A stretch of 64,000 nucleotides of DNA from Vicugna vicugna (Eukaryota). The notes beneath the pieces were generated by a model that was given only the letters and a program-made list of their open reading frames with translations, made no database searches and was not told where the DNA came from. The stretch is taken from the NCBI GenBank assembly GCA_013265495.1, contig MU060767.1, forward strand, positions 5,133,546 through 5,197,545, written 5' to 3'. This document shows positions 175 to 62,351 of this stretch, piece by piece. The position numbers and the translations under genes were made by a program. Position 1 is the first letter of the stretch, and each line of letters opens with the position of its first letter.

Positions 175-5372
<5,198 letters not shown>

Positions 5373-15900: not shown

Positions 15901-18900
15901 GTGGAATACTCTGAGAGCAACGCACCGCTGTTCATCCGTGCAGTCAACTCTGTGGCCAGCACCACGGGTCAGAGACTGTCCCTCCCTCCCCCACTGTTCA
16001 GAGTCCTCTTTCCTACTTGTCCCCACATGACTGCTCTCCTTTCTGTGTGGCAGGTGCTCTTCCATGGGCCAATCTGGTGTCCATCCTGGAGGAGAAGAAT
16101 GGTGCGGACCCTGAGTTGTTGGTGTATACTGTCACCCTCATCAACAAGGTCGGGTGGCGGGAGCAAGGGGAGAACTAAGCACCAATTCTGAGCCCCTCAG
16201 GCTCCTGACTTCCTGTTCCCATCAGCTTTAGCCTTGCCCTTCTACCTCACCCTCTAGACTCTGGCAGCGCTCCCGGATCAGGACTCCTTCTACGACGTGA
16301 CAGATGCACTGGAGCAGCAGGGCATGGAGGCACTGGTCCAGCGCCACTTGGGCACCGCTGGCACAGATGTCGATCTGCGCGCGCAGCTTGTGCTCTACGA
16401 GGTGGGCTGGACTGGCTGGGGCCGGACTGCTGGCGAGAGGAGGGGAGGGAGGGGAACGGGTGCAGATCAGTGCCCCATCCCACCTACTTGGGCCTCAGCC
16501 GCTCCCATCTGGGCTCAACTCCGCTAGAATGCCCTGCGGTTGGAGGATGGAGACATGGAAGAAGCTTTCGCAGGTGGGCGGCGCACCACTCGCCGAAAGC
16601 CTTCTTCAGAGGAAGGCAAGAGAAGCCGACGATCTCTAGAAGTGCGCACCCCAGAGCCTGGGTAAGAGCTAAGGAGCCTTGGCAGATGGGAAGGAGCGGA
16701 TCTGCCAGGAGTAGCTCTGCCTCCTGACAGGCCACGCCTCCAGCTCCACAGGCCCCGCCTCACCGATCGTCTCCATCTCCTCTGCCGGCCCTGCCCTGCT
16801 GTCAGGTCCCGCCTCCAGCCTCATAGGCTCCGCCCCATCTACAGGCCCCGCCTCCAGTCCCGGGGGCCAGGCCTCTGGCCTGCATACCACCGTGAGCCTC
16901 TTTCCTACCATTTCCGTGGCGCCCTCATCCGACAGCTCCTGTGAGAGGAGTATCTACAAGTAAGCAGGGAGATAGAGGCTGTCCTGGGAGTTCTTTCTCC
17001 AACTGTCCCTCCGCTCTGCGCCCCTCCACGGGCCCTCCGCCTCCTCTGCCCAAACTTCTCTGCCCACACGCGTGCTTTCTCTCTCTTTCTTTCCAGACTT
17101 CACCAAACTGCTCCTGTTTGGTAAGTGACTGCTGGGGGGTGGGGTTCGGCTCCGACTGGACCTCCTCCTCCTGTGGCTTCTCTTCATCTCTTTCTGGCAT
17201 TCTGCCTGTCTTTGCCAATGTCATCTGTTTCCCTACCCACTTCTGTCTTTCTGTCTGTGTCTGTCTGTCTGTCTCTCTCTCTCGTTCTGATCTTCTACTG
17301 CACTCTGTCTTGTGTCATGTCAGTCTCTCCCCTCCACTTCCACTTTCCTCACGTCTAGCCTCCCTCATCACCTCCTCTTCCCACCGTGCCTGGGAAGGAA
17401 CCCCTGATATCACCACCTAGCTCTGTGTGGGTGTGAGCAACTGGGCTTTGGGGTGGACCAGGCACCACTATTGCCAACTCTTCCTCTCGTCCCCCCCACC
17501 CAGGGCCCCTGAGAACCCACCTGTCCCCCAGTCCCCCACTGGGCAGGCCAGGCTGGAGTAAGTACAGAGGCCAGCCTGCCAGGCCTGCCATGTGCTCAGG
17601 GCTTCAGCATTGCTTCCCCCAGCGGGGGTTATATGTGCCTGATGCAGCCAGAGCTGGGGGGCTCTCAGGCCCTGTTTCTCCCAGACTGATGCCTCCTTGG
17701 TTACCCAGGAGCACTGGGAAGCAGTTCACTGGGGCCACAGAGGTTCCTGTGCTTCAATGGTGACAACTTAACAGCTTTGGCCAGCGATGAGAATGTTGAC
17801 TCCCAACCTAGAGCTGATTCTCCTGTGTCCTCAGCCCAGGATTAGGGCTGGGAGGGAATCTAGGGTGCTGTGTGATGTGGAGGTGGAAGAGTAACTTCCA
17901 GCTAAGGGAATGATAAGGGACTGAGTGCCAACAGAGGCTGAAGAGGCCAAGAAGGAAACAGGATCACATTCATTGTTTTAACATAAACTGAGTGCCTGTT
18001 GCTTACCAGGCCCTTTTTGGGCATAGACCACAGCTCTCAGAAGCTGCCAGACATGCCAAGGGAGGAACAGCATGGTGTGCCCATTTGGACAGCTGTTCCC
18101 TTCCCCTGCTCTAAGTGTCCTTGTCTAGAATCAGAACAGCGAACATGAATAGCAGCACAGTTGCAGATTAAATGTGAAGTAGAACTTCTCCCCACATGTT
18201 GACCTGGGAATACTGGGTTGGTAGTGACCCTCCCCAGATGTGGAAGACTGAACATGGAGAGGCTGGCCTTGCAGGGCAGGTTCTGGGTCTGCTCAGCGCA
18301 TGGACTGTTCCCTGTGTGTCTGTGTGTGCCTGCAATTAGGGGCAGTGCCTAGGGGCCCAGCAAGGCATGTGCACCACCCTGGGCTGGGGTGTGTCAGACA
18401 CCCTCACTGACACGTGCCTTCCCCTAGAGCCCGGTTCCTGGAGAATGTAGCAGCAGCAGAAACAGAAAAGCAGGCTGCACTGGCCCAGGGCCGGGCAGAG
18501 ACACTGGCTGGAGCTATGCCCGAAGAGGTCGATGGGCACCGAGGTAAGTAGGTGGGTGGGCAGAATTCACCTAGGTTGCCCTGTTGCTCCGCAGAGGGCA
18601 TGACACTGACAGCTTCTTCCACTTTTCTAGACACCCTGGAACTACGGGGCTCCCCAGAACCAGCCCCTGCACCCAGAACACCCCAGAGTGCTGCCCCCCG
18701 AATCCTGCTCCGGGCCCAGCAGTGCCTTGAGCCAGAGCCCAAGGAGACTTTGGCCCCACCAAGTCCCAAGACTGAGCCCATTCAGGAACTCCGTACCCAT
18801 GTACCTAAGCTCTGCATTGGGGATCTGGACTTCTCAGATCTGGGGGAGGATGAAGACCAGGACATGCTGAATACAGAGTCTGTGGAGGCAGGGAAAGGGG

Positions 18901-21900
18901 TCCCACCCCCACCTCCCCTGATCTCTGGAGGCCCCCCACCTCCTAAAAAAAAAGCCCCTTCCCACCACCTCCACCCCCAGTTTCCCCTCTTCCTCCTTCA
19001 GCACCTGATGGCCTAGCCCTCCCCACCAAGAGAAAGACAGTTAAACTCTTCTGGCGGGAGCTAAAGTTGGCTGGGGTCCATGGAGGCTCTGGGAGCCGCT
19101 TTGGGCCCTGCCCTACCCTGTGGGCCTCACTGGAGCCTGTCTCAGTGGATACAGCCCGGCTAGAACACCTGTTTGAGTCTCGAGCCAAGGATGTGCTGCC
19201 TTCCAAGGTAATCACACCCTTATCCAGGGGAGAGGGGAGCAAATCAACTCAAGGGTCTGAGTGAGTGGGGCTGCCACTCATTTCCCACATGGGGAAACTG
19301 AGGCAAATAAAGGAGTAGGGGCTTGTCTGAGGTCCCTTAGTAAGGGATCAGCCCATCCCAAAGCCTTACACATCCCAGATCCCTGGTTGTGGAATGATCC
19401 CATTTGGCTACTGAGAATGGGGCCTTGGTTACCCTCTTAGATTGTTGCCATAGCTAGTCCCTTTCCCAGTCTTATACTGCCCTTCTCCCAACTTCAAAGA
19501 AAGCTGGTGAGGGCCGCCGCACAATGACCACAGTGCTGGACCCCAAGCGCAGCAACGCCATCAACATCGGCCTAACCACGCTGCCACCCGTGCACGTCAT
19601 TAAGGCTGCCCTGCTCAACTTTGATGAGTTTGCTGTCAGCAAGGATGGCATTGAGGTAGGGATAGCCAGCTAGGGGTGTGGGAAATCTGGCCCTTTCCTT
19701 TGGTCATTGGGCATTTCCTGTCCCTCCAGTGGTGGGCATGGGCTTAGCATTTCTGCAGAGCAATCCTCGGACTCTGGGACTCCCCCACATGACCTAGGGA
19801 GGAGTGAACACCAATACCTGAAGCCTCAGGCCAGTGCTGAGTGGCCTATATGGGGTGGCGGGTGCATTCTCAGAAGCTACTGACTATGATGCCAACGGAG
19901 GAGGAGCGGCAGAAGATCGAGGAGGCCCAGCTGGCCAATCCTGATATACCCCTGGGCCCAGCTGAGAATTTCCTGATGACTCTCGCCTCCATCGGGGGCC
20001 TGGCGGCTCGCCTACAACTCTGGGCCTTCAAGCTGGATTATGACAGCATGGAGCGGGTACCTGGGTCATGGGGTGGGACAGGCAGTGGGGACAGGAGAGC
20101 ATAATGACCATGTAGTCTGAGTCCCTGACCTCCCATACCAGGAAATTGCAGAGCCACTGTTTGACCTGAAGGTGGGAATGGAACAGCTGGTCCAAAATGC
20201 CACCTTCCGCTGCATCCTGGCCACTCTGCTGGCTGTGGGCAACTTCCTCAATGGCTCCCAGGTGAGTGAGAGCATATAAGGGCAGGGGCTGGGGCTCTGG
20301 AGCCAACCAGGCCCAGGCTCAGATAGGGTCCTTTCAGAGCAGCGGCTTTGAGCTGAGCTACCTGGAGAAGGTGTCAGAGGTGAAGGACACGGTGCGCCGA
20401 CAGTCACTGCTGCACCATCTCTGCTCCCTGGTGCTCCAGACCCGGCCTGATTCCTCCGACTTCTACTCAGAAATTCCTGCCCTGACGCGCTGTGCCAAGG
20501 TCAGCACCTGCCAGAGGTTTGACTATAACCGGCCATGGCATGAGGGAGCACTGCTTCTCCCTAAGTGGACTGCCGTTCCAGTGCTTGCTCAGGATACAGG
20601 TGTTCATGTGGGCTGTGTCCTCTGCCGTACATACTCTTTTCTCTATTGGCCTGGCTACCCCTACTCAGTCTTTGGTCCTGTTTAGCTGCCACTTATCCCA
20701 AGAAACTTCTGTTACCCACTGCATCAGATGGACTTGTCTGTCTCCTGCAATAGACTGTGAGCTTTTGGAGGACAGGGGCCAGATCTTGGCTGTCTGTGTC
20801 CTCAGGACCCAGGCTGCCAGCCTGGCACAGAGGCAGTCTCAGGCAGTGTCCTTCTGTAGGGGAACAACATGTGTACCCTCTTCTTTTCCAGGTGGACTTT
20901 GAGCAGCTGACTGAGAACCTGGGGCAACTGGAGCACCGGTGTTGGGCAGCCGAGGAGAGCCTGCGGAACTTGGCCAAGCACGAGCTGGCTCCAGCCCTGC
21001 GTGCCCGCCTCACCCACTTCCTGGCCCAGTGCACCCGCCGTGTTGCCATGCTGAGGGTCGTGCACCGCCGTGTCTACAACAGGTGAGGTGTGGGCCAGAG
21101 AGAGAAGGGACTGCCACCACCATCCCTCAAACTCCAGGCAAGACTCACCATCCCTCCCCACCCCAACCTGCTTAGGTTCCATGCCTTCCTCCTGTACCTG
21201 GGGTACACGGCAGAGGCAGCCCGTGAGGTGCGCATCATGCAGTTCTGCCACACACTGCGGGAGTTCGCGCTGGAGTATCGGACTTGCCGGGACCGGGTGC
21301 TGCAGCAGCAGCAGAAGCGCGCCACGTATCGTGAGCGCAACAAGACCCGGGGACGCATGATCACCGAGGTGGGTGTCCCTTCCAGGTCTTGACTGATATC
21401 CCCACGGTTTTTTTCCCTCTACTCCCAACTCACCCTTTTCGCTTCTTCAGACAGAAAAGTTCTCAGGTGTGGCTGGGGAAACCCCCAGCAATTCATCTGT
21501 CCCAGTGGCTGTGAGCAGTGGGCCAGGACGGGGTGATGCTGATAGTCATGCCAGCATGAAGAGTCTGCTGACCAGCAAGCCTGAAGACACCACACATGGC
21601 CGCCGCAGCAGAGGTGGGACCTGGGGGCCACTGGGGGCAATGAGCTGGGGCCACCCTGGGCTGACCTCCCTATCTGGCTCCCTCAGGCATGGTCCAGAGC
21701 AGCTCCCCAGTCATGGCTACAGCAGTGGGGCCCTCCACTGTGCCCCAAGAAGAATCTCTGGGCTCCAGTTTACCAAGTGACACTTCAGATGAGATCATGG
21801 ACTTGCTGGTGCAGTCAGTGACCAAGAGCAATCCTCGTGCCTTAGCTTCTCGAGAACGCAAGCGTTCCCGTGGCAACCGCAAGTCTTGTGAGTATTCCCC

Positions 21901-22042
21901 GCATGCCCACTGCCTGCCTTAACCCCATCACTCCCTCCAACCCTGCTCTGTCCTTGCAGTGAGAAGGACGTTGAAGAGTGGGCTTGGAGAAGATCTGGTA
22001 CAGGCACTGGGACTGAGCAAGGGTCCTGGCCTCGAAGTGTGA
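6962..22042 (+). CDS. FHOD1: FH1/FH2 domain-containing formin FHOD1 (about 1162 aa if one base is added at the A9 run)
   Basis: Exons 6962-7162, 14294-14400, 14792-14856, 15175-15242, 15315-15420, 15497-15591, 15856-15967, 16054-16148, 16258-16401, 16528-16661, 16744-16959, [alt 17097-17120, 17504-17557], 18428-18543, 18631-19207, 19500-19655, 19874-20056, 20142-20261, 20338-20499, 20892-21082, 21176-21368, 21451-21613, 21687-21887, 21960-22042. Starts [13 protein letters not shown]; GBD/FH3, FH1, FH2 (KRKTVKLFW...GNFLNGSQ) and DAD ([19 protein letters not shown]); ends KGPGLEV-TGA. One frameshift at 18945-18953. Confidence 0.95.
8490..8627. repeat. Perfect tandem repeat, 3 x 46 bp
   Basis: Unit TACTGAAATAAACCTGGAGCACTACAGAGAATATAGTTTTTCTCCC starts at 8490, 8536 and 8582. 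Confidence 0.97.
11140..11347 (+). mobile_element. L1 3' end fragment (L1MA-like)
   Basis: ...TCACTATGTTGCATACCTGAAACTTACATAATATTGTAAATCAACTATACCTTAATAAAAATAAATAAAT, a typical L1 3' UTR terminus with A-rich tail. Confidence 0.8.
12334..12457 (-). mobile_element. Short tRNA-derived SINE (camelid-like) inserted into an L2 3' end
   Basis: A box (TAGCACAGTGG) and B box (GGTTCCATCC) on the minus strand; (AAAT)n tail; TSD CATGAATGTTT at 12323-12333 and 12458-12468. Confidence 0.85.
13790..14150 (-). mobile_element. L2 3' fragment
   Basis: CATTCATGTTCATT...CTTACTGTGTGCC followed by purine-rich L2-like sequence. Confidence 0.55.
17097..17557 (+). CDS. FHOD1: FHOD1 alternative cassette exons: 24-nt microexon (17097-17120) and 54-nt exon (17504-17557)
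   Basis: ttccag|ACTTCACCAAACTGCTCCTGTTTG|gtaagt and cccag|GGCCCCTGAG...AGGCTGGA|gtaagt. Both phase 2-2; together 78 nt encoding [26 protein letters not shown], matching my recollection of the known 78-bp FHOD1 splice insert. Confidence 0.85.
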
Positions 22043-22244
22043 AGGCCCTGCCTGCAGGACATGTACTAGGCCCCAGCCTGCAATGCAGGAGACTACACTG
22101 AAGAGGGACCAGAGGAGATTCTGGGCCTTTTCTCAAGGGCCACTCTGTGTTCCAGTGGCCAGCGCCGTGAGCAGTATTAGCTATGTGTGCCTGTGTGAGT
22201 GTGTGTGTGTGTGCATGTATGAGCTCCCTGGATGCATGGAGCAT

Positions 22245-22250
22245 AATAAA
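22245..22250 (+). terminator. FHOD1 polyadenylation signal
   Basis: AATAAA about 200 nt after the stop codon. Confidence 0.75.
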
Positions 22251-22391
22251 GTTTTCCTAGCCAATTCAAGAGCCTTTTTCTTCAAGGTACCCACCACGCT
22301 GGGTCTGTAGCAGAAGGAAAATACCAAGAACTGGCTCTCCCCACCTCTCTCTCATTATCACCCACACAGCCATTAGCCACATTCTGAGCCA

Positions 22392-22397
22392 TTTATT
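22392..22397 (-). terminator. TMEM208 polyadenylation signal
   Basis: TTTATT on + strand, about 125 nt after the stop codon. Confidence 0.75.
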
Positions 22398-22415
22398 CAA
22401 CAATCCTATACTTTA

Positions 22416-24451
<2,036 letters not shown>

Positions 24452-24673
24452 AATGCAACTCAAATACCCAGCCGAGGAAAGAAGGGAGAGCGATCGAAAC
24501 TGCAGTCAGTAGGTACCACATAGGCAGCACAGACACTTCCGGTGCAGACCCAAATCGTCAGCAACTGGGACGGAAATGAGGGGTCCACTTCCTTCCCAAG
24601 CTCCGCCTACCAGAATCGGTGGGACTACACTTCCCAGAAAGCTTTGCGCGGGGGCGGAGGCGGCAGGGATGCG
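24452..24673. promoter_or_regulatory. Compact bidirectional promoter TMEM208/LRRC29
   Basis: 222 bp between the ATGs; ETS/GABPA motif ACTTCCGG at about 24535-24542; ZNF143-type ACTACACTTCCCAGAAAGC at 24624-24642; both start codons sit in ATGGCGG (YY1-like core). Confidence 0.85.
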
Positions 24674-24899
24674 ATGGCGGAGTCGCTGCCCCTGGAGGTG
24701 AGAGGAGGTCGCCCTCAGGCCTAGCTCGGGACAGGCCCAACCTCGGGGTCCCGGGCTGTGGGGAGGGGCTGCCAGACAGCTCGCCCGGCCTCGCCCATCT
24801 GGCGGAAACCACCCGCCCGGGAGACCCCAGGACCTGCAGGCTATGGGTAATGGCCCCACTTTTGGGCCACTCCATCCCCTTAGCTTGGGGGACCATCCT

Positions 24900-27560: not shown

Positions 27561-28927
27561 ATATCATATTGAGCAGGAGGTTTTATTTTTATCAGTCAGT
27601 ACAAGCCTGCATCCAGACAGTGCTCAGGAAAGATTTCACCTAGAGGCTAGAGAGGGGAAGTGAAGACTCCATGAAGCTTAGGATCCAAGATGAACTAGAA
27701 GCCAGTGCTCTTAACCCCTCTGACCTACTGTGTTATCAGCTGGAGAAGGTTCCACAGGCCCCCAGCTCTAACAGCCCCCAATGCCCTGTCTTTTTCCCTC
27801 AGATACTCACATATATTCTGAGCTTCCTGCCTCTGTCAGATCAGAAAGAGGCCTCCCTCGTGAGTCAGGCCTGGTACTGTGCAGCCCAGAATGCCCTTCG
27901 GGAGGTAAGGCGCCCACCCTCACTTGGCCCATTCTCAGTTGTCTCACTTCAGCTTGCTCATGACCCTGCTCATACGTCATCCATCCATTCATCCTTGTGT
28001 ATATATTCATATATACTTGGCTCTGGGTACAGTTCTGGGACTCTACAGATGAATAAAACATATCCTTTCCTCTGAGGAGCTCATAGTCCAGTGCAGAAAG
28101 ATACATATGTGAGTGATCATACATCGTGTGCTCAATGCTGACACTGGAATGAAGGGTGCAGTGGGGACATTTGGAAGAAGAACATCGGAAGGAGACTGGC
28201 AGCACCAGGGAAGGCTTCCTGAAGGCACAGGATGAGGGAAAAGGTTGGTCTTCCAGGACTAATAACAGCACAGGTGAAGGGACTAAGGTGTAAAATAGTT
28301 CTGGAAACAACCAGCCAAGTTCCCTATGACTAGAACTTAGATGTGCGTGGGAGAAGTGCCAGGAGAAAGAGGTCAGATAGCAAGTTGGCAGATGTGCCCC
28401 GCCAGCAGCATTGCTGGGGCTTTCTCCTGATTCCCATCATGGGGCCTTTAAAGGAATGTTACCATGGAGAGTGCCATGGGGTCATTTGTGTCTTAGAACT
28501 CGATCTTCAGTGCAGTGTGGACTGGAGAGGGCAAGTCGGAGCTTAGGGAGACAGCCCACTAGAAGGTGAATGACAGCTGAGCTGCTCTGAAAGGTGAGCA
28601 GTGATGGCTCTTTAATTTTGACTTTGATTATAACTGAGGTTGAACAGTTTTCTCATTAGCCTACCATTTATATTTCCCTCTTTTGTTTATTTGTGTTCTT
28701 TGTCCATTTATCTATTGGGGTCTTAGTATTTTTCTTATCCATTTGTATGAAATTTTTATACATTAAAGAGATTAATTTCTTTTACCTATTTATTGAAATA
28801 CAGTCCCAGTATGTTTGCCTTTTAATTTGATTTGTAGCTATCTGTTTGTTTATGAGATTCAGAGGTTAAATTGCTAGGTTGTTGATTCTGAACATCCTTT
28901 TCTTTCTAATTTCTTCCATTGCTTTTT

Positions 28928-34400: not shown

Positions 34401-37400
34401 ACAGCTGTAAGCGGCTGCTTCTCTCTCTGGAGAAGCCAGGCTGGGTTCTCCCCACCTGGAAATGAGTTCCACGTGTCTTCTTGGGAGGATTCTGTTGATA
34501 AGTATCTTGCGGGACTGCAAACCAGGCATCGTTTCTGCCTTTCTGGTGGTTCCCTTTTGATGATATTCTGTGGGGAACAAGCAGGGAATGTCAGCTTGTC
34601 CTTGTGGTTACTCACAAGACAGGTTTTTTGGGGAGCTTGCTTGTGAAAACAAGAGCTTTTGCAAACCACTTGCCTGCAACCTGGGCATCTGACAGGGGTA
34701 GAGAAACAGGGCTAGGATTTTAGAAGCCAAGCCCTCTTCTCCCTTCCCCCACAGACCTGTTCCACCCTTTCCTGTACCTACTCTCCTTTGGCTCCATCTG
34801 GCACAAAATCAGGGAAGGTTCTAGGAGAACATCTCCCTCACTGGGGGTTCCCCAAACTCCTACACAAGCCAGCTTATTCCCACAGTGACTTAGCCCTGAG
34901 TTTGCCTATTGGCCCCACCCTATGCTGACTGTGTGCTCCCCACACTCACTCCCCTGTTCCTCTAAGGCAGGGCCAGCTCAGCTTCCTCCCTGCCTCTGAG
35001 ATTTATTCTGAGCTCCTGCCCACAGAAAGTGGATGCTTCTCTCTCTTTACCTGGACAGATAAGACAGACCCTCCAGAGATGAGCCGCAGGGAACACAAAC
35101 ACATCTTGAACTCTAGAGCCCGCAGGGCCCACACACGTGAGCGCGCATGCACACACGCATGCGCACATCTCGCACGCACGTGCATGCGCATATTTTCAGT
35201 CACACACAAAACCCGTTTTTGCAAACATTCATGTGGCTGAGACACTGAGGCCACCAGGGGACCTAGGCCTCACTGCCTGCCCCAGATCTCTGGCACCTCG
35301 GCCACGGAGGATGCTGGTGACACCTGTGTTGCTTCTTCCAGCCTTCAGCTGTTCTGAGGGCTATTTATATGTTCTCAAGAAAGTAGGGGAGGCTAGTTGC
35401 TTGGCTAATGCCAAGCTGAGGCCCTGGATTGGGAGCTGAGTCCATGGGTCTCAGGGCCACCTTCTGAAAGTCGCAAAGCTTGAGATCCAGCACACTTTGT
35501 CCTCCTGCTCCCTGGGGGCTTCGCTGGGTCTCCTCCAGGCCACCCTCCAGCCCTCCTATACCCAGCAAGAATGCCAAGTCCCCGCTCTGACCCAGCCCCT
35601 CCCGCGGCAGGCATTCAGTCCCATCCATCACTAACTTTCCTGCCCTCCCCTCATAGTCATCCCTTTTGAGACCCAGTGTGACTTCGTCCTACCTCCCACT
35701 TCCATCAGCACCTCTTCAACCACACAAGACACCACACACCACAGTGGGTCCCTATTGTAGAAGGGCCCTTCCCTGACCTGCCCTCAAACTCTAGCCAGCA
35801 AATGGCCACCAGACCTAATGCCCAGCACACTCTGAGGCCAGAGGGCTAACCCCAGGCCCAATGCTGCTTCTTAGACCAACGTGTGGTATAACATCCCTGT
35901 GTCCTCTGCCTCCCTTCCGGCCATCAAGAGCCTGGGTCTCAGGGGCATCTCCTGCATCAGTCTGACCAACCTGGATGGCTTGCCGGCTTCACACCAGGTG
36001 CTGCAGTCTGTTGCCTACCACATGGGCTCACACCTGCAGAGTTTGTGCCTCGGTGGGGGCAGCCCCACAGAGGCCTCCTTTGTGGCCCTGATCCTGGGCT
36101 GCCTGGCCCTGTGTATCCTTGACCTCAGTGGCTGCAACAGTCTCTTCACATCGGGCATGCTGCTAGCTCAGCCTGAGACAGCACAGAGGGTCCAGCAGGC
36201 ACTGAGTGGCCTTTGTGAGCTCAACCTGGCTAGCCTGCGGGACCTGGCTGATCTCAGCTTCAACCGTCTCAGTAGCTGTGCCCCCAGCCTGGAGCGCCTC
36301 TCTTTGGCCTACTGCTACCTCACCTTCGAACAAGGCCCAGCCAGGGGCTCCATCGGCCCCTAGGACTCCTCCCCCTCCCAACTCTCCTTTCACAACCTGC
36401 TGCGATTTGTGAAGGAGTGGGCTGGTAGGCTGTGCGCCCTGGACCTGAGTGGCACTGGCTTGCCACCCAAGGCCCTACAGGCCCTGGGCCAGGTGGCCGG
36501 GCTGCAGCTGCAGGAGCTGAGCTTGCACAGATGCCAGGACCTCTCCACAGAGGCTGTGGCTGCTCTTTGCTACCAGCAACCAGGCCTTACCTCCTTGGAC
36601 CTCAGTGGCTGCTCAGAACTAACTGTCTGAAGGGGCGCTCCTGGCTGTGAGCTGAGGCCTGCAGCACCTGCAGCACCTGAGCCTGAGGAAGCTGCAGCGG
36701 GTCACAGATGCGGGATGCTCAGCCCTAGGGGGCCTGCAGGAGCTGCAGAGCCTCAACATGGCCGAGTGCTGCCAGGTGAGAGGGTGGGAACTGGCCCAGG
36801 CGCTGGGCTCGGTGCATGGAGCTCCACCCCCATTGGCCTCCCTCAGCCTGGCCTACTGCTCCTCACTCAAGGTGAGCATCCCATCCCCTTCGTTCCTTCC
36901 CCACCAGGGCTAAGGGCTGGGGTGACTGGGAATGTGGCATCAGGGAGGTGCCCAGTGTTCATGTCCAAGTGGTAGTAGTAGAACTGAACTGGGGACATAG
37001 TCTGGAAGCGGAAAGGAGCCTAGATAGACAGTGCTGCCACCAACACTCCTCCCTGCAGCCCCAACAGTGGGTCCAGGTAGAGGGAGGTCCAAGAGATCAG
37101 GGTGGTCCAGCCCCCAAGGTGGCACACACCTCACAAGCCAAGTGCTTAGTGACCACTGCAGTCTTTGGAGCAGCTCTGGGGGCAGGTGTTCTGGAAGCCG
37201 GGAAGGCTGGTAGAAGGGGTGACAGAACCCAGTCCTGCGGGGAAGGGGCACTGAGGTTCCACCGAAGTGGTTGCTCTGGCAGGGTCTGAGGGAGGGAATG
37301 TGATGTGGGAGCAGAAGGGTCATTTCTTGGCTGAAGCCAGTTTCTTCAGTAGGGCTCAGCCCTGCCCCTCTGGGTGGTGTCCCTATCTTGGCAATGTCAG

Positions 37401-38777
37401 TCTCTCCCTCGTTAGCTGATTATTCCTTCAGTCTAGCACTGTGGCCAGGGCATTCCTAACCTGAAAACCATCTCAGCCTTTTTCCCCACAGGCGCCTCTC
37501 TTCCCCTGTCCTATTCCATCTTCACTGCTGTGTGTCTCTTAGCTGCTCTCTCTGGGGCCCCACATTCTCATGTCTCTGCATCTCACTACAAACCAGCTTC
37601 CTCTATTCTGTGCTTAATTCCTGCTCCCCCTACCTAACCCCAGTTGCTCCTGGCAGGTGGCAGCCCTACCTGGTCTGTGACCTCACAGTTCTAGCAGGAG
37701 CATGTCTGACTGGCTCAGCTAGGATCAGATGTCCGCTACTGGTGCTGGGAGCATAGGCAAGGTGAATACCACAGAAATTTTCACCTGCATCCTTCCTGCC
37801 CCAGCCAATTTGTCCTTCTGGTGCTGCATCTCTAGAACCCACCTCATCCATCTACACTGACTTTCACCAGCACCAGAACATTGTTGCTTCCTTCGAAGGA
37901 CCCTGTGGTAGCTCCCTATTGTCTGTGGGGCTGGAACCTTGGGCAGAACCCTACTAGTGATCCCTGCCAAGCCTGGTGACACAGGCACACCTCTCCACTG
38001 CCCTCTCCCTTTTACACTTCCCTCCTAGGACGCCTCAGTGTTCTCCCTGATCCCCGTGCTGAGCCCAAGCCTTAGGGTGCTAGACTTATCCTCCTGTGTG
38101 GCCCTCACCAACCAAACCATGCAAGCCATCTGCACTTATCTTACCCACCTCTCAGTCCTGTGTCTGGCCTGGTGCAAGGAGCTCCATGACTGGGGGTTTC
38201 TGGGGCTGAGGGAACCAAGTGAGGAGGCTTTGAAAGAGCCCAGGTGAGGGACCCTGGAGGTCAGGTGGGTGGGGCGTTCTCTGCCCTCCTACCCCTCCTA
38301 AGTCTCTCTCTGGGAACATTTGAGGGTCAAACTCAGGAGGAACCTGAGGCAGGGGCTTCTTCCCACAGCCACACCGAGAGCTGGAGCATCAGGCCTCCAG
38401 CCCCAAGAACCCTTCTCCCCAGCCACAGGACCCCTCCCTGCTCACGCTGCAGGCCCTGCGGGAGTTGGACCTCACAGCCTGCAGTAAGCTGACTGATGCC
38501 AGTTTGACCAAGGTGTGGGGCTGGGGGCTGGAGCCAGGGGTCTGGGCCAACCCACTTTTTGCTTGGAAAAACTTCCTTTCTTATGGGCTTCTGCTGCTTT
38601 GGCCATTCCTTTGTCTGGGGGCAGAGGAAGTTGGAAGGGCCCTAGACCTGGGCTCCAGTACACATTACCCTCCACCCCACCCCCATCCTTACAGGTGCTC
38701 CAGTTCCCCCAGCTGAAGCAGTTGTCACTGAGCCTGTTGCCCGCACTTACAGACAAGGGCTTGGTGGCTGTGGCCAG

Positions 38778-38909
38778 NNNNNNNNNNNNNNNNNNNNNNN
38801 NNNNNNNNNNNNNNNNNNNNNNNNNNNNNNNNNNNNNNNNNNNNNNNNNNNNNNNNNNNNNNNNNNNNNNNNNNNNNNNNNNNNNNNNNNNNNNNNNNNN
38901 NNNNNNNNN
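38778..38909. other. Assembly gap (132 N) inside LRRC29 exon 6
   Basis: N run. Confidence 0.99.
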
Positions 38910-39645
38910 GCAGTGAGTGTGTCCGGTGTTGCCACAGTACAGGGGTTTGGCTGGGGCCGATGCTGAGTTGGGCACTCATCTAGTGGCCTCCCTGCAGAAC
39001 ACTGGATACCACTGGGCAAGCGTGCAAGCAACTCCAGACGTTAGATGTGGCCATGTGTCCTGGCATCAGCATGGCTTCTGTCAGGTGCTTCCAAGCCCAA
39101 CTGCCCCAGGTGACCTGTGTCCAGTCCCGCTTCGTGGGGGGTGCTGACCTGACCCTAACACTCCGAGGCCAGGTCAGTAACCAGCCCTGCAGCTCAGCCT
39201 CCGTCACCTCCAGAGTCCTCAGCCCTGGCTTCTTGACCTAGAGTTTGACTCAGTGCCTTCTGTCTCCTTCTGCTACATGCCCCAGAGCCCCTTCTCCTTT
39301 TCTAGGACTAGGGGTGGGACTCATCCAGGGCAGCCCAAGGGGCTTCCTGCCCTACTCTGCCCCACAACCCAGCAGGGACGTTTTCCAGCTACATGTCACG
39401 GTCACAGACCCCTGGAAATGGCAGCTCCTGCTCTCCTGTCCAGGGCTGGGTTCAGAGGCCAGGGTTACAGGTGGGCTGGGGAGGAGCAGACCTTCTGCCT
39501 CTTGCCCTGTCCACTTCTCACACTAAGGCCTGTGCCCACCTTATTCCCTACAGGAGCTCGCGCGCGCCACCTTGTTCCCTACAGGAGCTCTCCCAGTCCC
39601 CTGCCAGCACTGAGCTTTAGCAGTCTTTGTTGTACGCCCAACAAG

Positions 39646-45646: not shown

Positions 45647-45778
45647 NNNNNNNNNNNNNNNNNNNNNNNNNNNNNNNNNNNNNNNNNNNNNNNNNNNNNN
45701 NNNNNNNNNNNNNNNNNNNNNNNNNNNNNNNNNNNNNNNNNNNNNNNNNNNNNNNNNNNNNNNNNNNNNNNNNNNNNN
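45647..45778. other. Assembly gap (132 N) in the E2F4 3' UTR
   Basis: N run. Confidence 0.99.
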
Positions 45779-46442: not shown

Positions 46443-49400
46443 TCAGAGATTGAGAACAGGCACATCAAAGAGGTCACAGACACCTTCACTCTCGTCCAGG
46501 TTGTAGATGTAATCGTGGTCTCCGGGGGGTGGAGAAAGGCGGAGGAGGGGTGCAAACACTGCAGAGAGCAACAGGCTGAGTCCTCAGGGCCAAGACCCCT
46601 CCCAGTAGCCACCCAAACCCTGCCCACACTCACCCCCCACCTTTCTGGGCCACGTACCTTCTGAGGACATTAGCTCCTCCAACAGCTCTGAGCTCATGCA
46701 CTCTGGGGATGGAGGGAGAGCTCAGTTACATTCTGGCTCCCACCTCTCCACCCACCAAAGCCCATGAAGGGGACCACACCCACCCACCCATCAAGAACTG
46801 TGCCCTTTGCCCAGGGATCAAACACAATCATATGGTTCTCAGAAGGGCAAGAAAACAGCCCCAAGACCCAGTGAGCTGTGCCCCTCACCCCAGCCCCAGA
46901 GAGGAACACTGCCTTACCTCGCGTGGGGTCAAAGATTTCTGACAGCTCCTTGGGGAGTTCCAGAACTGAAAAACAAGAAAGACATGCTCAAGGGCACAGA
47001 TGTCCAGCCTAGTCCCACTCTAGCCCCTGCTTTCTCAGATCCTGTATCACCCACCCAGGGGCTCCACACAGCTGAGACGTAGGCCCTACCCTAGGTCAAG
47101 ATGACACTGTCTCTCAGGCTCCCCTACTAGACCTGAATTTCTCAGTGCCAAGCCCAGGGTCCCAAAGGCCCGCAGTAGGTAATTGGTACAGCCCTTCTAA
47201 CTCAGAGGTTCTGAAGAAGGGAAGCAATCCCACTCTATTTCTGGGCTCATCATGCATATCATCTGATGGCAAACACCCTGTCCATCCCTGCCCTTGCTAA
47301 GCACCTACTTGGTGCCATGCTCACATACCACACCCCAGGCCAGGTCACCTGACAGAGGAGACAGACAGACTCTTAAATAGGGGTTAGTGCTACAGGGTGA
47401 TGACTCTGCTACAAAGGTCTGACTGGGAAGACACACATGGGAAACAGGAAAATGAAGCTGGAAAGGAGAGAGCTAGGTCACAAGGGATTTCATATTCCAG
47501 GTTTAGGAGTTCTGATTTTATCCAGGAGGCCTTAGGGAGCTGTTAAAGATACTTTTTTATTTAAAGCAGTTCATTTATTTATTTAATTGGGTTGGGGGGG
47601 GATTAGGTTTATTTATTTATTTTTTAATGGAGGTACTGGGGATTGAACCCAGGACCTTGTGCATGCTAGGCATGCACTGTACCACTGAGCTATACCCTCC
47701 TCAAAGATACGTTTGAAGACAGAAAACTGTCACAGTCAGGCTGCATTTCAGACTTGTCAGTTGGGGTAAAGAAGATGTGGACGTGTGGGAATGAAGTGCC
47801 TATTGGATGTGCAGAGGAAGGCATGTAGACAAAAGAGGTAAAGTTCAGGCAAAAGACCTAGGCAAGACGGTGACTGGGAATACATCTACCCAGAACTGGG
47901 GGCCTCCACAGGTGTGAAATGGGCCAGAGACTTGAAAAGCCAGATTTAAATGAACACCAGGGAGAGATCAGAAGGAGAAGTCATTAAGAGAGAAGAGCCA
48001 AGTGCTGGCATCACTAATGCCAAAGGAGAAAAAGAGCATCCACATGGAGCAAAACAGCCCCAGAGCAAATCAGCCTAGAAACCCGCTGGAGCTGGCCATC
48101 AGGGCTGGGCAGCTTACTGAGAGCACTGGCGTGGCGTGGTGGGGGGTTGTGGGCTGTGTGTGTGTTATGGGGGGCGGCGNNNNNNNNNNNNNNNNNNNNN
48201 NNNNNNNNNNNNNNNNNNNNNNNNNNNNNNNNNNNNNNNNNNNNNNNNNNNNNNNNNNNNNNNNNNNNNNNNNNNNNNNNNNNNNNNNNNNNNNNNNNNN
48301 NNNNNNNNNNNNNNNNNNNNNNNNNNNNNNNNNNNNNNNNNNNNNNNNNNNNNNNNNNNNNNNNNNNNNNNNGGGGGGGGGGCGACTGCTGCAACCTGAA
48401 GGCTGACTAGGGAACCGAGATACAGAGTAGAATGGAGATGACTTTTTCTAGGAGTCCAGACAGGATACAGGGAAGGTGAGGGAGGGGAACACAAGGGACG
48501 AAGTGTCATTCAGTGAGGAGAGACTAAGTGGTTCTTGTGAGCGGAGAAGAATGAGTCCTAAAAAAAGCAAACACTCAAAACACAAGATAGAGAGGAGAGG
48601 AAATGACATCACCTCTAAGACACTGCCCACCTTTGGAGCCTGAGGACCATAGCACAGCCCCTTCCCTAGGACAGTGCTCACACCTTCCTGAGACAGGTCC
48701 ACGGGGTAGAACACAGGGCTTGAGGAAGGGCTAGGCAGTTCTGTGTCAACTCAGGAAGTGGGTAAAGGGGCATAAGCACCAAGCCAGAGGCCAGGCTCCT
48801 CACCCTAGCTGGCAGAGCTCTGGTGCCAAGGCAGAGGTGGATAGCAGGGAGCTGGCTCTTGGGCTGGCCAGCTGTGGCTGAGGAGACAGAACTGGGTTTG
48901 AGGCCCAAGTCTGTTTCTGACCAAGGACTGTCTGAGGCTAGGCTCTCCCTGTTCCCAAGAGGACAAGCACTCACCGCCTGTGGGGTCTGCCTTGATGGGC
49001 TCAAAGGAGGTAGAAGGGTTGGGTCCAGATGAACTGCTATTGCTGCTGCTGCTGCTGCTGCTGCTATCCAACAGGGCAGAGGACTGCAGAGGCCGGGTAT
49101 CCAGTGCTGTCAGGCCCAGTGGGAGTGTGCTGAGCTCACCACTGTCCTTGCTATCAGTTCCAGGACCGCCACTCACTGCAACCACATCCCCCAAACCCAG
49201 TCACATGGGGGCAGGAAGTAGGATATTAAAGCTGGCCATGCTAGAACCCACAGTGAGAATGCAACAGCCCTGGTTCCTAGGCCCAAGGAGAGTTAGGCAC
49301 TGCCAATCACTCACAAAGTGGTACCATGAAAATTAGTCACTGAAGGGGCATGAGGCCTGCAGGAGGGAGAATCATGGACACACCTGCTGTGACCACAAAT

Positions 49401-52275
49401 CAAGAGGGGCTGCCAGGGCCAGTGGGATACTGGCAGATCTGGGGGAAAAGTGCCACCACTAATGCCCTTTCACATAGTCAAAGCTCTGTTAAAAAAGGCT
49501 CATTCATTGCACTAGCAAGGAGAGGCCAGCTGGGGGCCAGGAAAAGGACAAACCCCACAAGGTCTCTTCCATCACACAGAGGTATTGCCTCTTGGGCCCC
49601 AGAAATCACCCCATTACCAGCTTCCCGTTGTGCCTCACCTGTGATCTCAGCTGCTGGACTGGCCACCCCCTGAGCTTCGGTGCTGCCAGGGACAGGGGTA
49701 GGGGTGGTCACCTGGGGACTGCTTGGGCGTGAGGCATCCTGGGGTTGAGCCAGGGCAGGCTCGGGCAGAGGCGGAGGGGTAGAGACAGCAGGTGGGCTCT
49801 GGAGCAGATCTTCGGGTGGTGGCACAGGCACTGCCACAGGCGGCGAGCTCCATGCCTCCTTGTTCACCAACAGTACCTCAATGGGGCCACTTACACTCTT
49901 CAGGTGAATCTGGTACTTCTTCTGCCCATTGAGTCCCTGGAGGTAGAGGTGGAGGACGGAGGAGAGATGGAACTGGAAACAGGATTGGCCCTTGCCTGAC
50001 CCTGTGCCAGGGCCACAGTGTCCTCTCCCACCCCAGACTGCCCGTCCTCCTAGATAACCCCAAACCCCAGGCCTCCCCCTACCTGCCCCACCCGGGACTT
50101 ATCAGGCTCCACAGCCAGCACCCGCCCTCAATCAACCCTGCCTGCCTGGGCTGAGCACCCACCTCTGGGATGGGCACCTCCAGGCTGGTGCCTGATGGGG
50201 CCCGGATGGCCAGGAGGGTGTCTCCTAGGATGACAAGGAGAATGGGTCAAGGCCCATGGGTTCAATCTGAGCTGGGAATGGGGGTATCTATCCCTTGGAG
50301 CAAGGAAGGAGTTCATGGTCTCCGAGGGGCTAGACAGGAGGCTTCATTCATCCCTTATGGTGGCTCAGTGGCTAAGGCAGAGAACTAAAGCTATTCTCCT
50401 CCTAAGAGCCCAGAGGTCTGTAACTAGAAAATCTGGGTTCAGACACATGGAGCAAAAGATTGCTGGCCATGGACATCTCCCTGATTGAAGGGGCTGCTCC
50501 CTAGACGTAGATATTCTGGCCAAAGCCAATGTCCCTTCCCCAGAACCAGTCTGGGAAGTGCAAGATGGAGAAGGAATAGTTCCCATAACTACAATGCAAC
50601 TAAACTAACTATAGATTGGAAGTTGGCATCGTTGCCCCCTGCACACCAGCATGCACACACACTTTCTCCCTTGTATGATTCTGTTACACCTGAGAAGTCA
50701 TACCTAGGGGACAGTGCAGATAGGGGCTGACCCAGGGATCCAGCCCAGGATTCCCATATCCTCTCAGTATGGTTACCCTCCACAGGGTCCAGTGACCATC
50801 GAACCCAGGACTTACCCTGTCTGGATCTTCTTTGGGTAGGCCCCAGGAACCCTCTTAAGAGAAGGAAATCTCCTTGGGCACTGAGCTCATTGTTCAGGGC
50901 TGTGGCTCAGCCCAACCCCACCCCCATCTCCCCCTACCCAGGCTCTGCTCACCAGCAAAGCATCTGCAGATGTCCTCATGAGTCACGTAGGCCAAGGTGC
51001 GGGGGTTAAGGAGAACAGCTGATGCCCTGCCTACACTGACAGATAGCAGACCACAGAGAGGACCCTGATCTTTAGCACAGCTCTGACATAAAGTCCTGAA
51101 AAAGTCCTGAGGCCTGGGGTCTACATGGGGAGGTATCATAGGCCAAAACTGATGGAGGGGAGAGGCTCTGAGAAGGGAGCCCAAGGCTGGGACCTGGCCA
51201 GGACATACAATACCATCCTCCCAAGAGGGACAGGGCCTAGGGGACCACAGAGCAAACCCAGCTGGACTAAAGAGCCCCTCATCCACTCCCCCGCAGNNNN
51301 NNNNNNNNNNNNNNNNNNNNNNNNNNNNNNNNNNNNNNNNNNNNNNNNNNNNNNNNNNNNNNNNNNNNNNNNNNNNNNNNNNNNNNNNNNNNNNNNNNNN
51401 NNNNNNNNNNNNNNNNNNNNNNNNNNNNNNNNNNNNNNNNNNNNNNNNNNNNNNNNNNNNNNNNNNNNNNNNNNNNNNNNNNNNNNNNNNNNNNNNNNNN
51501 GAGAGGGGCTGCCAAGAATCCTGGGGCCCATAGCCCCTGCTCACTCCTGCAACCCCCACCCCTGACACTTCTGGGTAGGCGATCCCATTGCCCTCCCAGG
51601 TGCCCACACTCACTTCCACTGGATGCTATTCTTGGATTTTTTCTCGATCAGCCCGATACCTTCCAGCACGTTAGTAATGTCATAAATCCGCCGCTTCTGG
51701 CGCACAGCTAGGGTGTCAGCTGCCTGGCAGGCAGAACAGAATGGGAAATGCTCAGCCTCACTCTCAGGTGAGACTTGGTCTGGAATAGTCTGGAAAAGGG
51801 GTGGCCTGGATCCCAACCCACCTCCCAGGCACTACAGCAGCTCAGAAGCGCGAGGTAGGAAGAGGCCTGGTGAAGCCTGAGCTGCTGTTCTGATGCCCTT
51901 CTCCCCACACCTGCCAGGAAGGGCCACGAGGACCAGCACCTGCAGCCCCAAGCCTGGCACACAGCTGATGCCCAATGGCCTCGGCTGAATGAATGAAACA
52001 GCTCCCAGCCTCCCTCCTGTGAGAAAGCACATGGATGACAGTCTGCTCTCTGCGGGTTCAGTTGGGCCGCCCCGGGGTTCCCGCTACCGGCCCCGGCCTG
52101 GTCCACCATCCCCTCTGCCGCCCCTTAGCCCGGGCCGCACCAGCTTGAGGTCAAGCACGCCGTCCTTGGCCTCCTGCAGAAGCGACACGAACTTGGTGGT
52201 GAGAAGTCCCAAGCTCTTCTCATGCCGGCTTGGGGTGCCCGGGGGCGGCGGCGCCTGCGGCCCGGCCTCCGCCAT
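46443..52275 (-). CDS. E2F4: Transcription factor E2F4; exon 3 hidden in N gap 51297-51500
   Basis: Exons 52141-52275 ([29 protein letters not shown]), 51614-51723 ([27 protein letters not shown]), [exon 3 in gap], 50953-50996, 50163-50224, 49639-49936, 48975-49175 (poly-Ser), 46918-46965, 46658-46702 and 46443-46558 ([28 protein letters not shown]). Confidence 0.96.
47553..47702 (-). mobile_element. Short tRNA-derived SINE in E2F4 intron 7
   Basis: GGGTATAGCTCAGTGGTACAG...GGTTCAATCCCCAGTACCTCC on the minus strand; flanking AAAGATAC repeat at 47545-47552 and 47703-47710. Confidence 0.85.
48180..48372. other. Assembly gap (193 N) flanked by G-rich sequence, E2F4 intron 7
   Basis: N run. Confidence 0.99.
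49042..49065 (-). repeat. (AGC)8 coding repeat, E2F4 poly-serine
   Basis: (GCT)8 on + strand within exon 7. Confidence 0.9.
50997..51012 (-). other. U12-type (AT-AC) branch point and 3' splice site of E2F4 intron 3
   Basis: Minus strand reads TTCTCCTTAACCCCCGCAC|CTTGGCCTAC. TCCTTAAC branch box at 51005-51012; intron ends in AC and there is no AG before the exon. Confidence 0.85.
51297..51500. other. Assembly gap (204 N) where E2F4 exon 3 should lie
   Basis: N run, preceded on the minus strand by a pyrimidine tract. Confidence 0.99.
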
Positions 52276-61425: not shown

Positions 61426-62351
61426 AGCTTGTGTTTATTCTGATGGGAAGAATTCAGTAGAAAGGAAGAGATTGATGATGTAGGAGATGAAGGAGAGAGG
61501 AGAAATGCTGGAATTGCGTCCCTGAGCATGCAGGAGAGCTTGGAGGCTGGAGACTTCAGTCAGTTTCTGGGGAGAGACTGGATTGGACTGAGCCGTTCAG
61601 ATTCAGGGGTGAGTGTCCTGACAGTGGCCTTGGATGACCACTAGGAAGATGTCTCTGATAGGGGACAGACCAAGGACTGCCTTGGATTTGCTGAATTTTC
61701 CCTCTGTACACCAAAAGCTGATTCTAATTTGGATTTGAACAGACGGCCCAGAGAAGAGAGAGCATTGCATGTGGAGGGACTGACATAAGCAAGGGGCATG
61801 CAGGCATTCAAACTGAGGCCCAATGGGCTGAAGGAGATGGGTGGAGCTAGGTGGGAGGGGCGGGGTGAGACTGAGAAAATGCCATAGGTAGAAAGCAGGT
61901 AGAAGGTAGTGAGATCCCCTCATCCATCATCCTAGCAGCTGAGGCTACATTGTACCAGCTTCCAGTCAGGGTGGGTGCTGAGCACAGGGATTAAAATCAT
62001 GAGTAGGTGCTTACGCCTTGCTCACGGGAGCTCACAGGCTAAGGGGATTTGAGTAACCACCATCCTGGTAGGTGTATAAGACTCTTCCTCCAGCTTTGCC
62101 CCAGTCCAGCTTGCTTGGATGAGCCTGCTGGAGGGGTAGGCAGTGGGATGGAGGTAAGAGGGCAGATGAAGAAGACCTGGCATCAGGTTCTGGGCCCATC
62201 AAGTGCCGGGCAAAGACAGTGTGGCGCACAGGGCCTGCTGGTCCTCATGCCACACTCACTCATGTTGGCCTCCATATGCCTTTCTGTGTCCCCAGAAGTC
62301 AACAGTGTGGGGAGTTGGAGTGATCCAGCTGGATGTGACCCCCAGAACAGA

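What the first reader, a model, noticed from the sequence alone, without database searches (positions are those of the whole stretch)
35875..38243. LRRC29/FBXL9 is a unitary pseudogene in this lineage
Seen: premature TAG (36361-36363), a 4-nt excess before GAA GGG GCG (36625-36628) giving TGA at 36628-36630, TGA (36653-36655, CGA decay), and exon 4 ending in phase 2 against a phase-0 exon 5. Trp/Cys/Leu at positions where I recall Arg/Pro (TNVW, KEW, LCEL, RLCAL, VLCLAW, VRCF) fit CpG decay under relaxed selection. Repairing the lesions gives an ORF of about 621 codons. Several independent lesion types amid intact neighbours argue against sequencing error. I recall the human locus also being truncated or pseudogene-annotated, so this SCF substrate adaptor may have been lost repeatedly.
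Basis: partly seen in the sequence, partly recalled or inferred. Interest (0 to 1): 0.75.

Follow-up and report, generated by a model that had tools for sequence, protein, structure and literature searches.

The report
Dead LRRC29/FBXL9 gene in camelids
The F-box ubiquitin-ligase adaptor gene LRRC29/FBXL9 is a broken, no longer protein-coding relic in this camelid genome; two of its five defects are also in Old World camels, so it died before camels and llamas split, which makes this a real but fairly ordinary lineage-specific gene loss.

Summary
All seven exons of LRRC29/FBXL9 sit in the ancestral FHOD1–TMEM208–LRRC29–ELMO3 block, with canonical splice sites. Measured against intact 621-aa orthologues, the reading frame carries five lesions.

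- Q205* (TAG, 36361-63).
- A 4-nt AACT tandem duplication (36617-24), which creates TGA at 36628-30.
- R301* (TGA, 36653-55).
- A 1-nt deletion at the end of exon 4 (about 38240).

The window is 97% identical to a labelled Camelus ferus locus, so it comes from a camelid about 3% diverged from Camelus, probably a llama or alpaca relative. R301* and the exon-4 deletion are also present in the C. ferus reference and in every independent Camelus read assembly that covers them. A dromedary protein model ends at the same stop. The gene was therefore dead before Old and New World camelids split (about 16 Mya), and these two lesions are not assembly errors.

Since the split, LRRC29 exons have diverged faster than their own introns (96.55% against 97.43% identity). 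dN/dS is 0.63, against 0.24-0.34 between intact species.

Golden jackal, pangolin and a whale-like contig carry different lesions, so the loss is recurrent. The three window-only lesions could not be checked in reads. The scan had not noted this locus before.

The parts
24674..24697 (+). LRRC29 exon 1 (ATG, MAESLPLE), intact, beside the TMEM208 divergent promoter
   Evidence: Aligned to muntjac exon 1. ATG and GT donor are present. The exon with 40-nt flanks is 100% identical to C. ferus.
27803..27904 (+). Exon 2, the F-box exon (102 nt, phase 0/0), open; it carries R30Q at an Arg that is invariant in 22 intact species
   Evidence: Pfam F-box PF00646 scores 21.9 bits against a cut-off of 20.5. 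AG/GT sites are present. R30Q is shared with Camelus.
35875..36871 (+). Exon 3, the large LRR exon, 997 nt instead of 993; it carries three disabling lesions
36361..36363 (+). Premature stop Q205* (CAG→TAG), window lineage only
   Evidence: CAG in muntjac and in Camelus.
36617..36624 (+). AACT AACT tandem duplication (+4 frameshift) that brings TGA 36628-36630 into frame; window lineage only
   Evidence: A single AACT in muntjac and Camelus.
36653..36655 (+). Premature stop R301* (TGA) in the ancestral frame, shared with Camelus
   Evidence: TGA in C. ferus L010 and in 8 of 8 Logan contigs. The dromedary and C. ferus protein models end here. Arg in 22 of 22 intact species.
38029..38243 (+). 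Exon 4, 215 nt instead of 216: a 1-nt deletion at about 38240 (GAGCCTCAG→GAGCC-CAG), a frameshift shared with Camelus
   Evidence: The identical motif is in C. ferus and in 6 of 6 Logan contigs that cover it.
38369..38512 (+). Exon 5, 144 nt, open, phase 0/0
38695..38912 (+). Exon 6, 218 nt (normal length); 132 nt are masked (38778-38909), the visible parts are open
   Evidence: The masked part was not read.
38998..39241 (+). Exon 7. The ancestral stop codon is CGA (39164-39166, stop-loss, window lineage only) and the frame runs 25 codons on to TAG 39239-39241
   Evidence: TGA in muntjac, cattle and Camelus, TAG in hyaena.

Best explanation
This is the orthologous LRRC29/FBXL9 gene, which encodes an F-box plus leucine-rich-repeat substrate adaptor of SCF ubiquitin ligases. 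It has decayed into a unitary pseudogene in camelids.

Shown: the gene keeps its ancestral position, its seven exons and all of its splice sites. The ancestral frame is broken by R301* and by a 1-nt deletion at the end of exon 4. Both lesions are also in Old World camels, so they arose in the camelid stem lineage. The window's own lineage (New World camelid-like) then added Q205*, a 4-nt tandem duplication and loss of the stop codon.

Inferred: any transcript from the promoter shared with TMEM208 has a premature stop in exon 3 of 7. It would be an NMD target, or would at best give an F-box stub of 204 residues (300 in Camelus) that lacks most of the LRR substrate-binding arc. The SCF-FBXL9 adaptor function is therefore lost. 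After inactivation the exons drifted neutrally, with CpG transitions destroying conserved Arg codons.
For: Orthology: the gene order FHOD1(+), TMEM208(-), LRRC29(+), ELMO3(-) is the same in muntjac, C. ferus, jackal and pangolin loci.

Intact reference: 621-aa proteins exist in many orders. The exon sizes 24/102/993/216/144/218/169 nt are identical in muntjac, cattle and hyaena, where my lesion scan found no lesions.

Lesions in the window.

Identity of the relative: the P0282 cluster holds XP_032342437.1 (Camelus ferus) and XP_031314144.1 (C. dromedarius). The window is 97.0-98.0% identical to the C. ferus locus over 32 kb, and L001 is 99.96% identical to it.

Shared lesions: TGA301 and the exon-4 deletion are in C. 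ferus and in every Logan contig that covers them.

Relaxed constraint:
- Exon identity between window and Camelus is 96.55%, against 97.43% for LRRC29 introns and about 98.3% for the FHOD1 and ELMO3 regions.
- dN/dS is 0.63 (36.5 non-synonymous, 19.5 synonymous changes), and 0.85-0.9 in exon 3. Intact pairs give 0.24-0.34.
- Post-split changes are spread evenly over codon positions.
- The window has 11 and Camelus 14 replacements at 272 sites that are invariant in 22 intact species.
- The window has lost 11 of 23 conserved Arg positions.
Against: - The three window-only lesions rest on a single assembly. No independent copy from this species is in the collections.
- dN/dS of 0.63 is below 1. 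By my binomial approximation it cannot be distinguished from 1 (about p = 0.1), and it is significantly above 0.3 (about p = 0.003).
- An ORF from Met336 that skips exon 4 and runs through exons 5-7 is still open in both camelids, and only 13 changes are available to test it (dN/dS 0.46).
- 45 codons of exon 6 are masked.
- NCBI models in Camelus are annotated as protein-coding, not as pseudogenes, which suggests the locus is still transcribed.
Confidence: 0.9

Rival explanations
1. The locus is not fully dead. A shorter product survives: either an F-box-less, LRR-only protein from Met336 (exon 3 tail, then exons 5-7 with exon 4 skipped, like my recollection of the human 223-aa LRRC29 protein), or an N-terminal stub of the F-box plus a few LRRs.
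For: - The Met336 ORF that skips exon 4 has no internal stop in the window (239 codons, 45 of them masked), and the same exons are open in C. ferus.
- All four frame-breaking lesions lie outside that ORF.
- Isoform models that skip exon 4 (549 aa) are annotated in many mammals.
- C. ferus has a 228-aa gene model over exons 5-7.
- dN/dS over this part is 0.46.
Against: - Only 7.5 non-synonymous and 5.5 synonymous changes are available, which fits neutrality equally well.
- The chance that 4 lesions all miss 35% of the CDS is about 0.18, which is not significant.
- The window lost its stop codon and adds 25 residues.
- Without the F-box the protein cannot recruit SKP1, so adaptor function is lost in any case.
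- The N-terminal part evolves at omega 0.85-0.9.
- Pangolin and whale destroy exons 5-7.
- The human counterpart carries the pseudogene symbol FBXL9P.
Confidence: 0.07
2. The lesions are sequencing or assembly errors and the gene is intact in the living animal.
For: Q205*, the +4 duplication and the stop-loss are seen only in this one assembly. I could find no second copy from the same species.
Against: - R301* and the exon-4 deletion are identical in the C. ferus chromosome assembly and in Logan assemblies from separate sequencing runs (8 of 8 for R301*, 6 of 6 for the deletion). Dromedary and C. ferus protein models end at the same stop.
- The window's lesions are of three types: two nonsense substitutions and a stop-loss substitution, a 4-nt duplication, and a 1-nt deletion.
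- The substitution pattern is independently that of a neutral sequence.
Confidence: 0.01
3. This is a decayed duplicate, and an intact functional LRRC29 paralogue lies elsewhere in the camelid genome.
For: The whole genome was not searchable with these tools.
Against: - The broken copy sits in the ancestral syntenic slot with all introns.
- Searches with the window's own exon piece found nothing from a camelid closer or more intact than the truncated Camelus models.
- No camelid appears among the 120 best full-length LRRC29 proteins, while other artiodactyls do.
Confidence: 0.02

Closest known systems
LRRC29 / FBXL9 (F-box and leucine-rich repeat protein 9), for example the Muntiacus reevesi protein XP_065781586.1 of 621 aa
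   Same: Same syntenic position, the same seven-exon structure and phases, about 84-85% amino-acid identity over the readable exons, the same F-box exon and the same LRR exons.
   Different: The camelid copy has two premature stops, two frameshifts and a lost stop codon, so it cannot make the 621-aa protein.
Human LRRC29, alias FBXL9P
   Same: The same gene, named as a pseudogene by its HGNC-style alias, which appears in bioRxiv 10.1101/2023.02.13.528235. Lrrc29 was the only F-box orthogroup in Euarchontoglires whose omega was not significantly below 1 (PMC3984280).
   Different: The human sequence was not examined here. Intact genes in ruminants, pigs, carnivorans, bats, rodents and lemurs mean that the camelid loss is phylogenetically independent of any primate loss.
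Camelus ferus LOC116665783 (XP_032342437.1, 323 aa) with the adjacent 228-aa gene model, and C. dromedarius XP_031314144.1 ('F-box/LRR-repeat protein 20-like', 209 aa)
   Same: The orthologous locus, 97% identical in DNA to the window. The two named proteins (XP_032342437.1 and XP_031314144.1) end exactly at the shared TGA301.
   Different: They are annotated as uncharacterised protein-coding fragments rather than as one pseudogene. Camelus lacks the window's Q205*, +4 duplication and stop-loss.
Other lineage-specific losses of LRRC29 seen here: Canis aureus, Manis javanica, and a cetacean-like contig
   Same: The same gene in the same synteny, with a broken reading frame.
   Different: The lesions differ. 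The jackal has a +7 insertion in exon 3. The pangolin has Q315* and W542*. The whale-like contig has a +1 insertion in exon 4, four indels in exon 5, mutated acceptors of exons 5 and 7, and a stop at codon 445. None matches the camelid lesions.

Membership tests
LRRC29/FBXL9 orthogroup (FBXL class of SCF substrate adaptors) | N-terminal F-box domain | tested here: met
   Exon 2 (27803-27904) matches Pfam F-box PF00646 at 21.9 bits against a cut-off of 20.5, and F-box-like PF12937 at 22.6 bits against 24.3.
LRRC29/FBXL9 orthogroup (FBXL class of SCF substrate adaptors) | C-terminal array of cysteine-containing leucine-rich repeats | tested here: met
   The separate exon pieces give only sub-threshold LRR_1, LRR_6 and LRR_4 hits. 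They align over their whole length at 84-88% identity to orthologues whose LRR domains pass Pfam thresholds.
LRRC29/FBXL9 orthogroup (FBXL class of SCF substrate adaptors) | Orthology by conserved synteny and exon structure | tested here: met
   The FHOD1-TMEM208-LRRC29-ELMO3 order is seen in four other species. The exon boundaries and phases are the same.
LRRC29/FBXL9 orthogroup (FBXL class of SCF substrate adaptors) | Open reading frame that encodes the full F-box plus LRR protein | tested here: not met
   Two in-frame stops, a +4 insertion, a -1 deletion and a stop-loss. It is a relic of the family, not a working member.
Unitary pseudogene | Disabling mutations in the ancestral frame of a gene that is intact in related species | tested here: met
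   The controls (muntjac, cattle, hyaena) showed no lesions.
Unitary pseudogene | Lies at the ancestral locus with its introns (neither processed nor duplicated) | tested here: met
Unitary pseudogene | No functional copy elsewhere in the same genome | not testable with these tools
   Only protein collections could be searched, and they hold no intact camelid LRRC29. A whole-genome search was not possible.
Unitary pseudogene | Relaxed selection after inactivation | tested here: met
   Omega is 0.63 against 0.24-0.34 in intact pairs. Exons are more diverged than introns. Replacements at invariant sites are in excess. Omega is not statistically separable from 1.
Unitary pseudogene | Lesions are real (seen in independent data) | tested here: inconclusive
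   The two shared lesions are confirmed in C. ferus and in 6-8 independent Camelus assemblies. The three window-only lesions are unconfirmed.

The most novel reading that the evidence does not exclude
LRRC29/FBXL9 is a repeatedly discarded SCF adaptor, lost independently in at least camelids, canids, pangolins, cetaceans and hominids. In some of these lineages (camelids, jackal, human) every lesion spares the same C-terminal ORF, which runs from Met336 through exons 5-7. The gene may therefore be converging on an F-box-less, LRR-only protein with a function of its own rather than simply dying.
Probability: 0.08. Interest if true: 0.55.

Novelty: new member of a known kind. Interest (0 to 1): 0.35.

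Why it matters
FBXL9 is an orphan F-box protein. I know of no substrate for it, and the papers I searched named none. The results show that it was dispensable for at least about 16 million years in camelids and that it was lost independently in several other mammals. This marks it as conditionally dispensable and gives natural knock-outs for asking what it does. It also corrects the annotation: the Camelus 'uncharacterized protein' and 'FBXL20-like' models are fragments of one pseudogene. It is not a surprise for the field. Lineage-specific unitary pseudogenes are common, and this gene was already noted for near-neutral evolution in Euarchontoglires (PMC3984280).

Tried and rejected
I dropped that approach.
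- I looked for independent copies from the window's own species by exact ORF look-up (51-aa, 86-aa and 127-aa ORFs) and by homology search. None is on record, so the window-only lesions stay unverified.
- A literature search for the SRA run numbers of the Logan contigs found nothing. The relative was identified through cluster members with NCBI names instead.
- At first I mis-counted exon 6 as 217 nt and suspected a hidden frameshift. The alignment showed that it starts at 38695 and is 218 nt long, as in intact species. That suspicion is rejected.
- I considered hippopotamids as an alternative identity, because the protein tree joins the window weakly with a whale ORF (SH-aLRT 82). The 97% DNA identity to a labelled Camelus ferus locus rules that out.
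- A nearby alternative donor cannot rescue exon 4, because there is no other GT near 38243.
- A literature search for LRRC29 together with gene loss or camelids found no paper holding both.
- The human sequence and the masked stretches were deliberately not examined.
Full report
**What is in the window.** The window is a gene-dense mammalian block. Reading the stop-free segments suggests SLC9A5(-), FHOD1(+), TMEM208(-), LRRC29(+), ELMO3(-), E2F4(-), EXOC3L1(+) and KIAA0895L(+). The order FHOD1(+), TMEM208(-), LRRC29(+), ELMO3(-) was confirmed in the annotated loci of muntjac, wild Bactrian camel, golden jackal and pangolin. The flagged stretch 35875-38243 covers exons 3 and 4 of LRRC29/FBXL9.

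**Reference gene.** A HMMER search with the longest open piece of exon 3 found a 621-aa protein, P0003 (Muntiacus reevesi, XP_065781586.1). A second search with P0003 showed intact proteins of about 621 aa in ruminants, pigs, peccary, hyaena, bear, cats, many bats, moles, rodents, lagomorphs, lemurs and armadillo. I fetched the muntjac locus (L009) and mapped its seven coding exons exactly. Their sizes are 24, 102, 993, 216, 144, 218 and 169 nt, the last including the stop codon. Cattle and hyaena loci have identical exon sizes, canonical splice sites and no in-frame stop under my lesion scan, so the scan does not invent lesions.

**Lesions in the window.** All seven exons are present with AG/GT splice sites:

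| Exon | Window coordinates |
|---|---|
| 1 | 24674-24697 |
| 2 | 27803-27904 |
| 3 | 35875-36871 |
| 4 | 38029-38243 |
| 5 | 38369-38512 |
| 6 | 38695-38912 |
| 7 | 38998 onward |

Exon 2 is the F-box exon and matches PF00646 above its threshold. Codon-by-codon alignment to muntjac gives five lesions:

- Q205*, CAG→TAG at 36361-63.
- A tandem AACT AACT at 36617-24. This is a +4 insertion that makes exon 3 997 nt long and brings TGA 36628-30 into frame.
- R301*, TGA at 36653-55, in the ancestral frame.
- A 1-nt deletion near 38240. Exon 4 is 215 nt and ends in phase 2 before the phase-0 exon 5.
- CGA instead of the stop codon at 39164-66. The frame runs 25 codons on to TAG 39239-41.

The fifth is new. 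Exon 6 has normal length, but 132 nt of it are masked and were not read. At first I mis-counted its start, and the alignment corrected that.

**Which animal, and are the lesions real.** A length-restricted homology search with the exon-3 piece found P0282. This is a 256-aa ORF on 15 contigs assembled from separate public sequencing runs. It is 91% identical to the window piece and ends at the same '...LLAVS' stop. Its 90%-identity cluster contains XP_032342437.1 (LOC116665783, Camelus ferus) and XP_031314144.1 (C. dromedarius), and both end at the same place.

The C. ferus chromosome locus (L010) is 97.0-98.0% identical to window 14491-46631. The Logan contig L001 is 99.96% identical to L010. 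A protein tree puts the window and L001 together inside a well-supported artiodactyl clade, outside the pigs and the ruminants. The window therefore comes from a camelid about 3% diverged from Camelus. That fits a New World camelid, given a split at about 16.3 Mya (PMC12127551), and it agrees with earlier notes of this scan that call the genome alpaca-like.

C. ferus carries exactly two of the five lesions: TGA301 and the exon-4 deletion. The TGA context is in 8 of 8 Logan contigs. The deletion motif is in all 6 contigs that reach exon 4. These two lesions therefore predate the Camelini-Lamini split and cannot be assembly errors.

Q205*, the +4 duplication and the stop-loss are specific to the window's lineage. 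I could find no second data set for that species.

**Signature of relaxed selection.**

- Identity between window and C. ferus is 96.55% in LRRC29 exons. It is 97.43% in LRRC29 introns and about 98.3% across the neighbouring FHOD1 and ELMO3 regions.
- Nei-Gojobori dN/dS between window and Camelus is 0.63 (36.5 non-synonymous, 19.5 synonymous changes), and 0.85-0.90 within exon 3. Muntjac-cattle, muntjac-hyaena and cattle-hyaena give 0.24-0.34. By a simple binomial approximation of mine, 0.63 is above 0.3 (p about 0.003) and is not separable from 1 (p about 0.1).
- Polarised post-split changes are spread evenly over codon positions (21, 14 and 20). Ten of the 29 changes in the window lineage are CpG transitions.
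- At 272 sites invariant in 22 intact species, the window has 11 replacements and Camelus 14, most of them arising after the split. Cattle and sheep have 0 and 1.
- The window has lost 11 of 23 conserved Arg positions, to Trp, Cys, Gln, Lys or stop.
- Only two or three radical changes and two lesions are shared by both camelid lineages. This suggests, as an inference, that inactivation was not long before the split.

**Mechanism.** The following is inferred. A premature stop in exon 3 of 7 should trigger nonsense-mediated decay. Otherwise it leaves an F-box stub that lacks most of the LRR arc which binds substrates, so the SCF adaptor function is gone.

The one alternative I cannot exclude is an F-box-less ORF from Met336 that skips exon 4 and reads exons 5-7. 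It is open in both camelids, and a 228-aa model covers it in C. ferus. Only 13 substitutions bear on it (omega 0.46). The window has also lost its stop codon, and pangolin and whale destroy these exons.

**Repeated loss.** The same scan on other loci gave different lesions:

| Locus | Lesions |
|---|---|
| Canis aureus | +7 insertion in exon 3 |
| Manis javanica | Q315* and W542*, plus in-frame 12-nt indels |
| Cetacean-like ENA contig (clusters with a Balaenoptera musculus LRRC29 protein) | +1 insertion in exon 4, four indels in exon 5, acceptors of exons 5 and 7 mutated, stop at codon 445 |

None of these matches a camelid lesion.

The human gene carries the alias FBXL9P. A 2014 survey found that Lrrc29 was the only F-box orthogroup in Euarchontoglires whose omega was not significantly below 1 (PMC3984280). 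The canid case needs care, because a related canid-like ORF (P0023) reads through the insertion site.

**Verdict.** This is a clean unitary pseudogene, shared by all camelids sampled. I found no mention of it in the searched literature, and in Camelus it is mis-annotated as protein-coding fragments. As a kind of event it is ordinary.

Noticed in passing
window 39164-39241: The LRRC29 stop codon is CGA (it is TGA in Camelus, muntjac and cattle). The frame extends 25 codons to TAG 39239-41.
   Followed up: yes
L010 (Camelus ferus GCA_009834535.1) 10001-24734: The NCBI annotation splits the dead LRRC29 locus into two 'protein-coding' models. LOC116665783 (323 aa) has a 5' extension, skips the F-box exon and ends at the shared TGA. 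A separate 228-aa model covers exons 5-7. These models suggest the pseudogene is still transcribed.
   Followed up: partly
L011 (Canis aureus) 15594-16593; L012 (Manis javanica) 13783-16839; L013 (ENA ERZ27291708, cetacean-like) 5059-6218: LRRC29 looks independently broken in three other lineages. The jackal has a +7 insertion in exon 3. The pangolin has two in-frame stops. The whale-like contig has several frameshifts and two lost splice acceptors. A related canid-like ORF (P0023) lacks the +7 insertion, so the canid lesion may be young or polymorphic.
   Followed up: partly
window 22952-23083, 38778-38909, 45647-45778 (also 48180-48372, 51297-51500): The first three N runs correspond to intervals of exactly the same length (132 nt) in the Camelus ferus locus. 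They are therefore length-preserving masks, not assembly gaps. One lies inside LRRC29 exon 6, and one lies in the region I assigned to TMEM208. I did not try to read their letters.
   Followed up: partly
window 27890-27892 (codon 30, F-box exon): Arg30 of the F-box is invariant in 22 intact mammals and is Gln (CAG) in both the window and Camelus. This is a shared radical replacement in the otherwise intact F-box exon.
   Followed up: partly
window 62350-62940: The large first coding exon of KIAA0895L (MVLDSGAQVYEQ... to ...GQFIHQ, about 196 codons) is open, and the gene looks intact at this end of the window.
   Followed up: no
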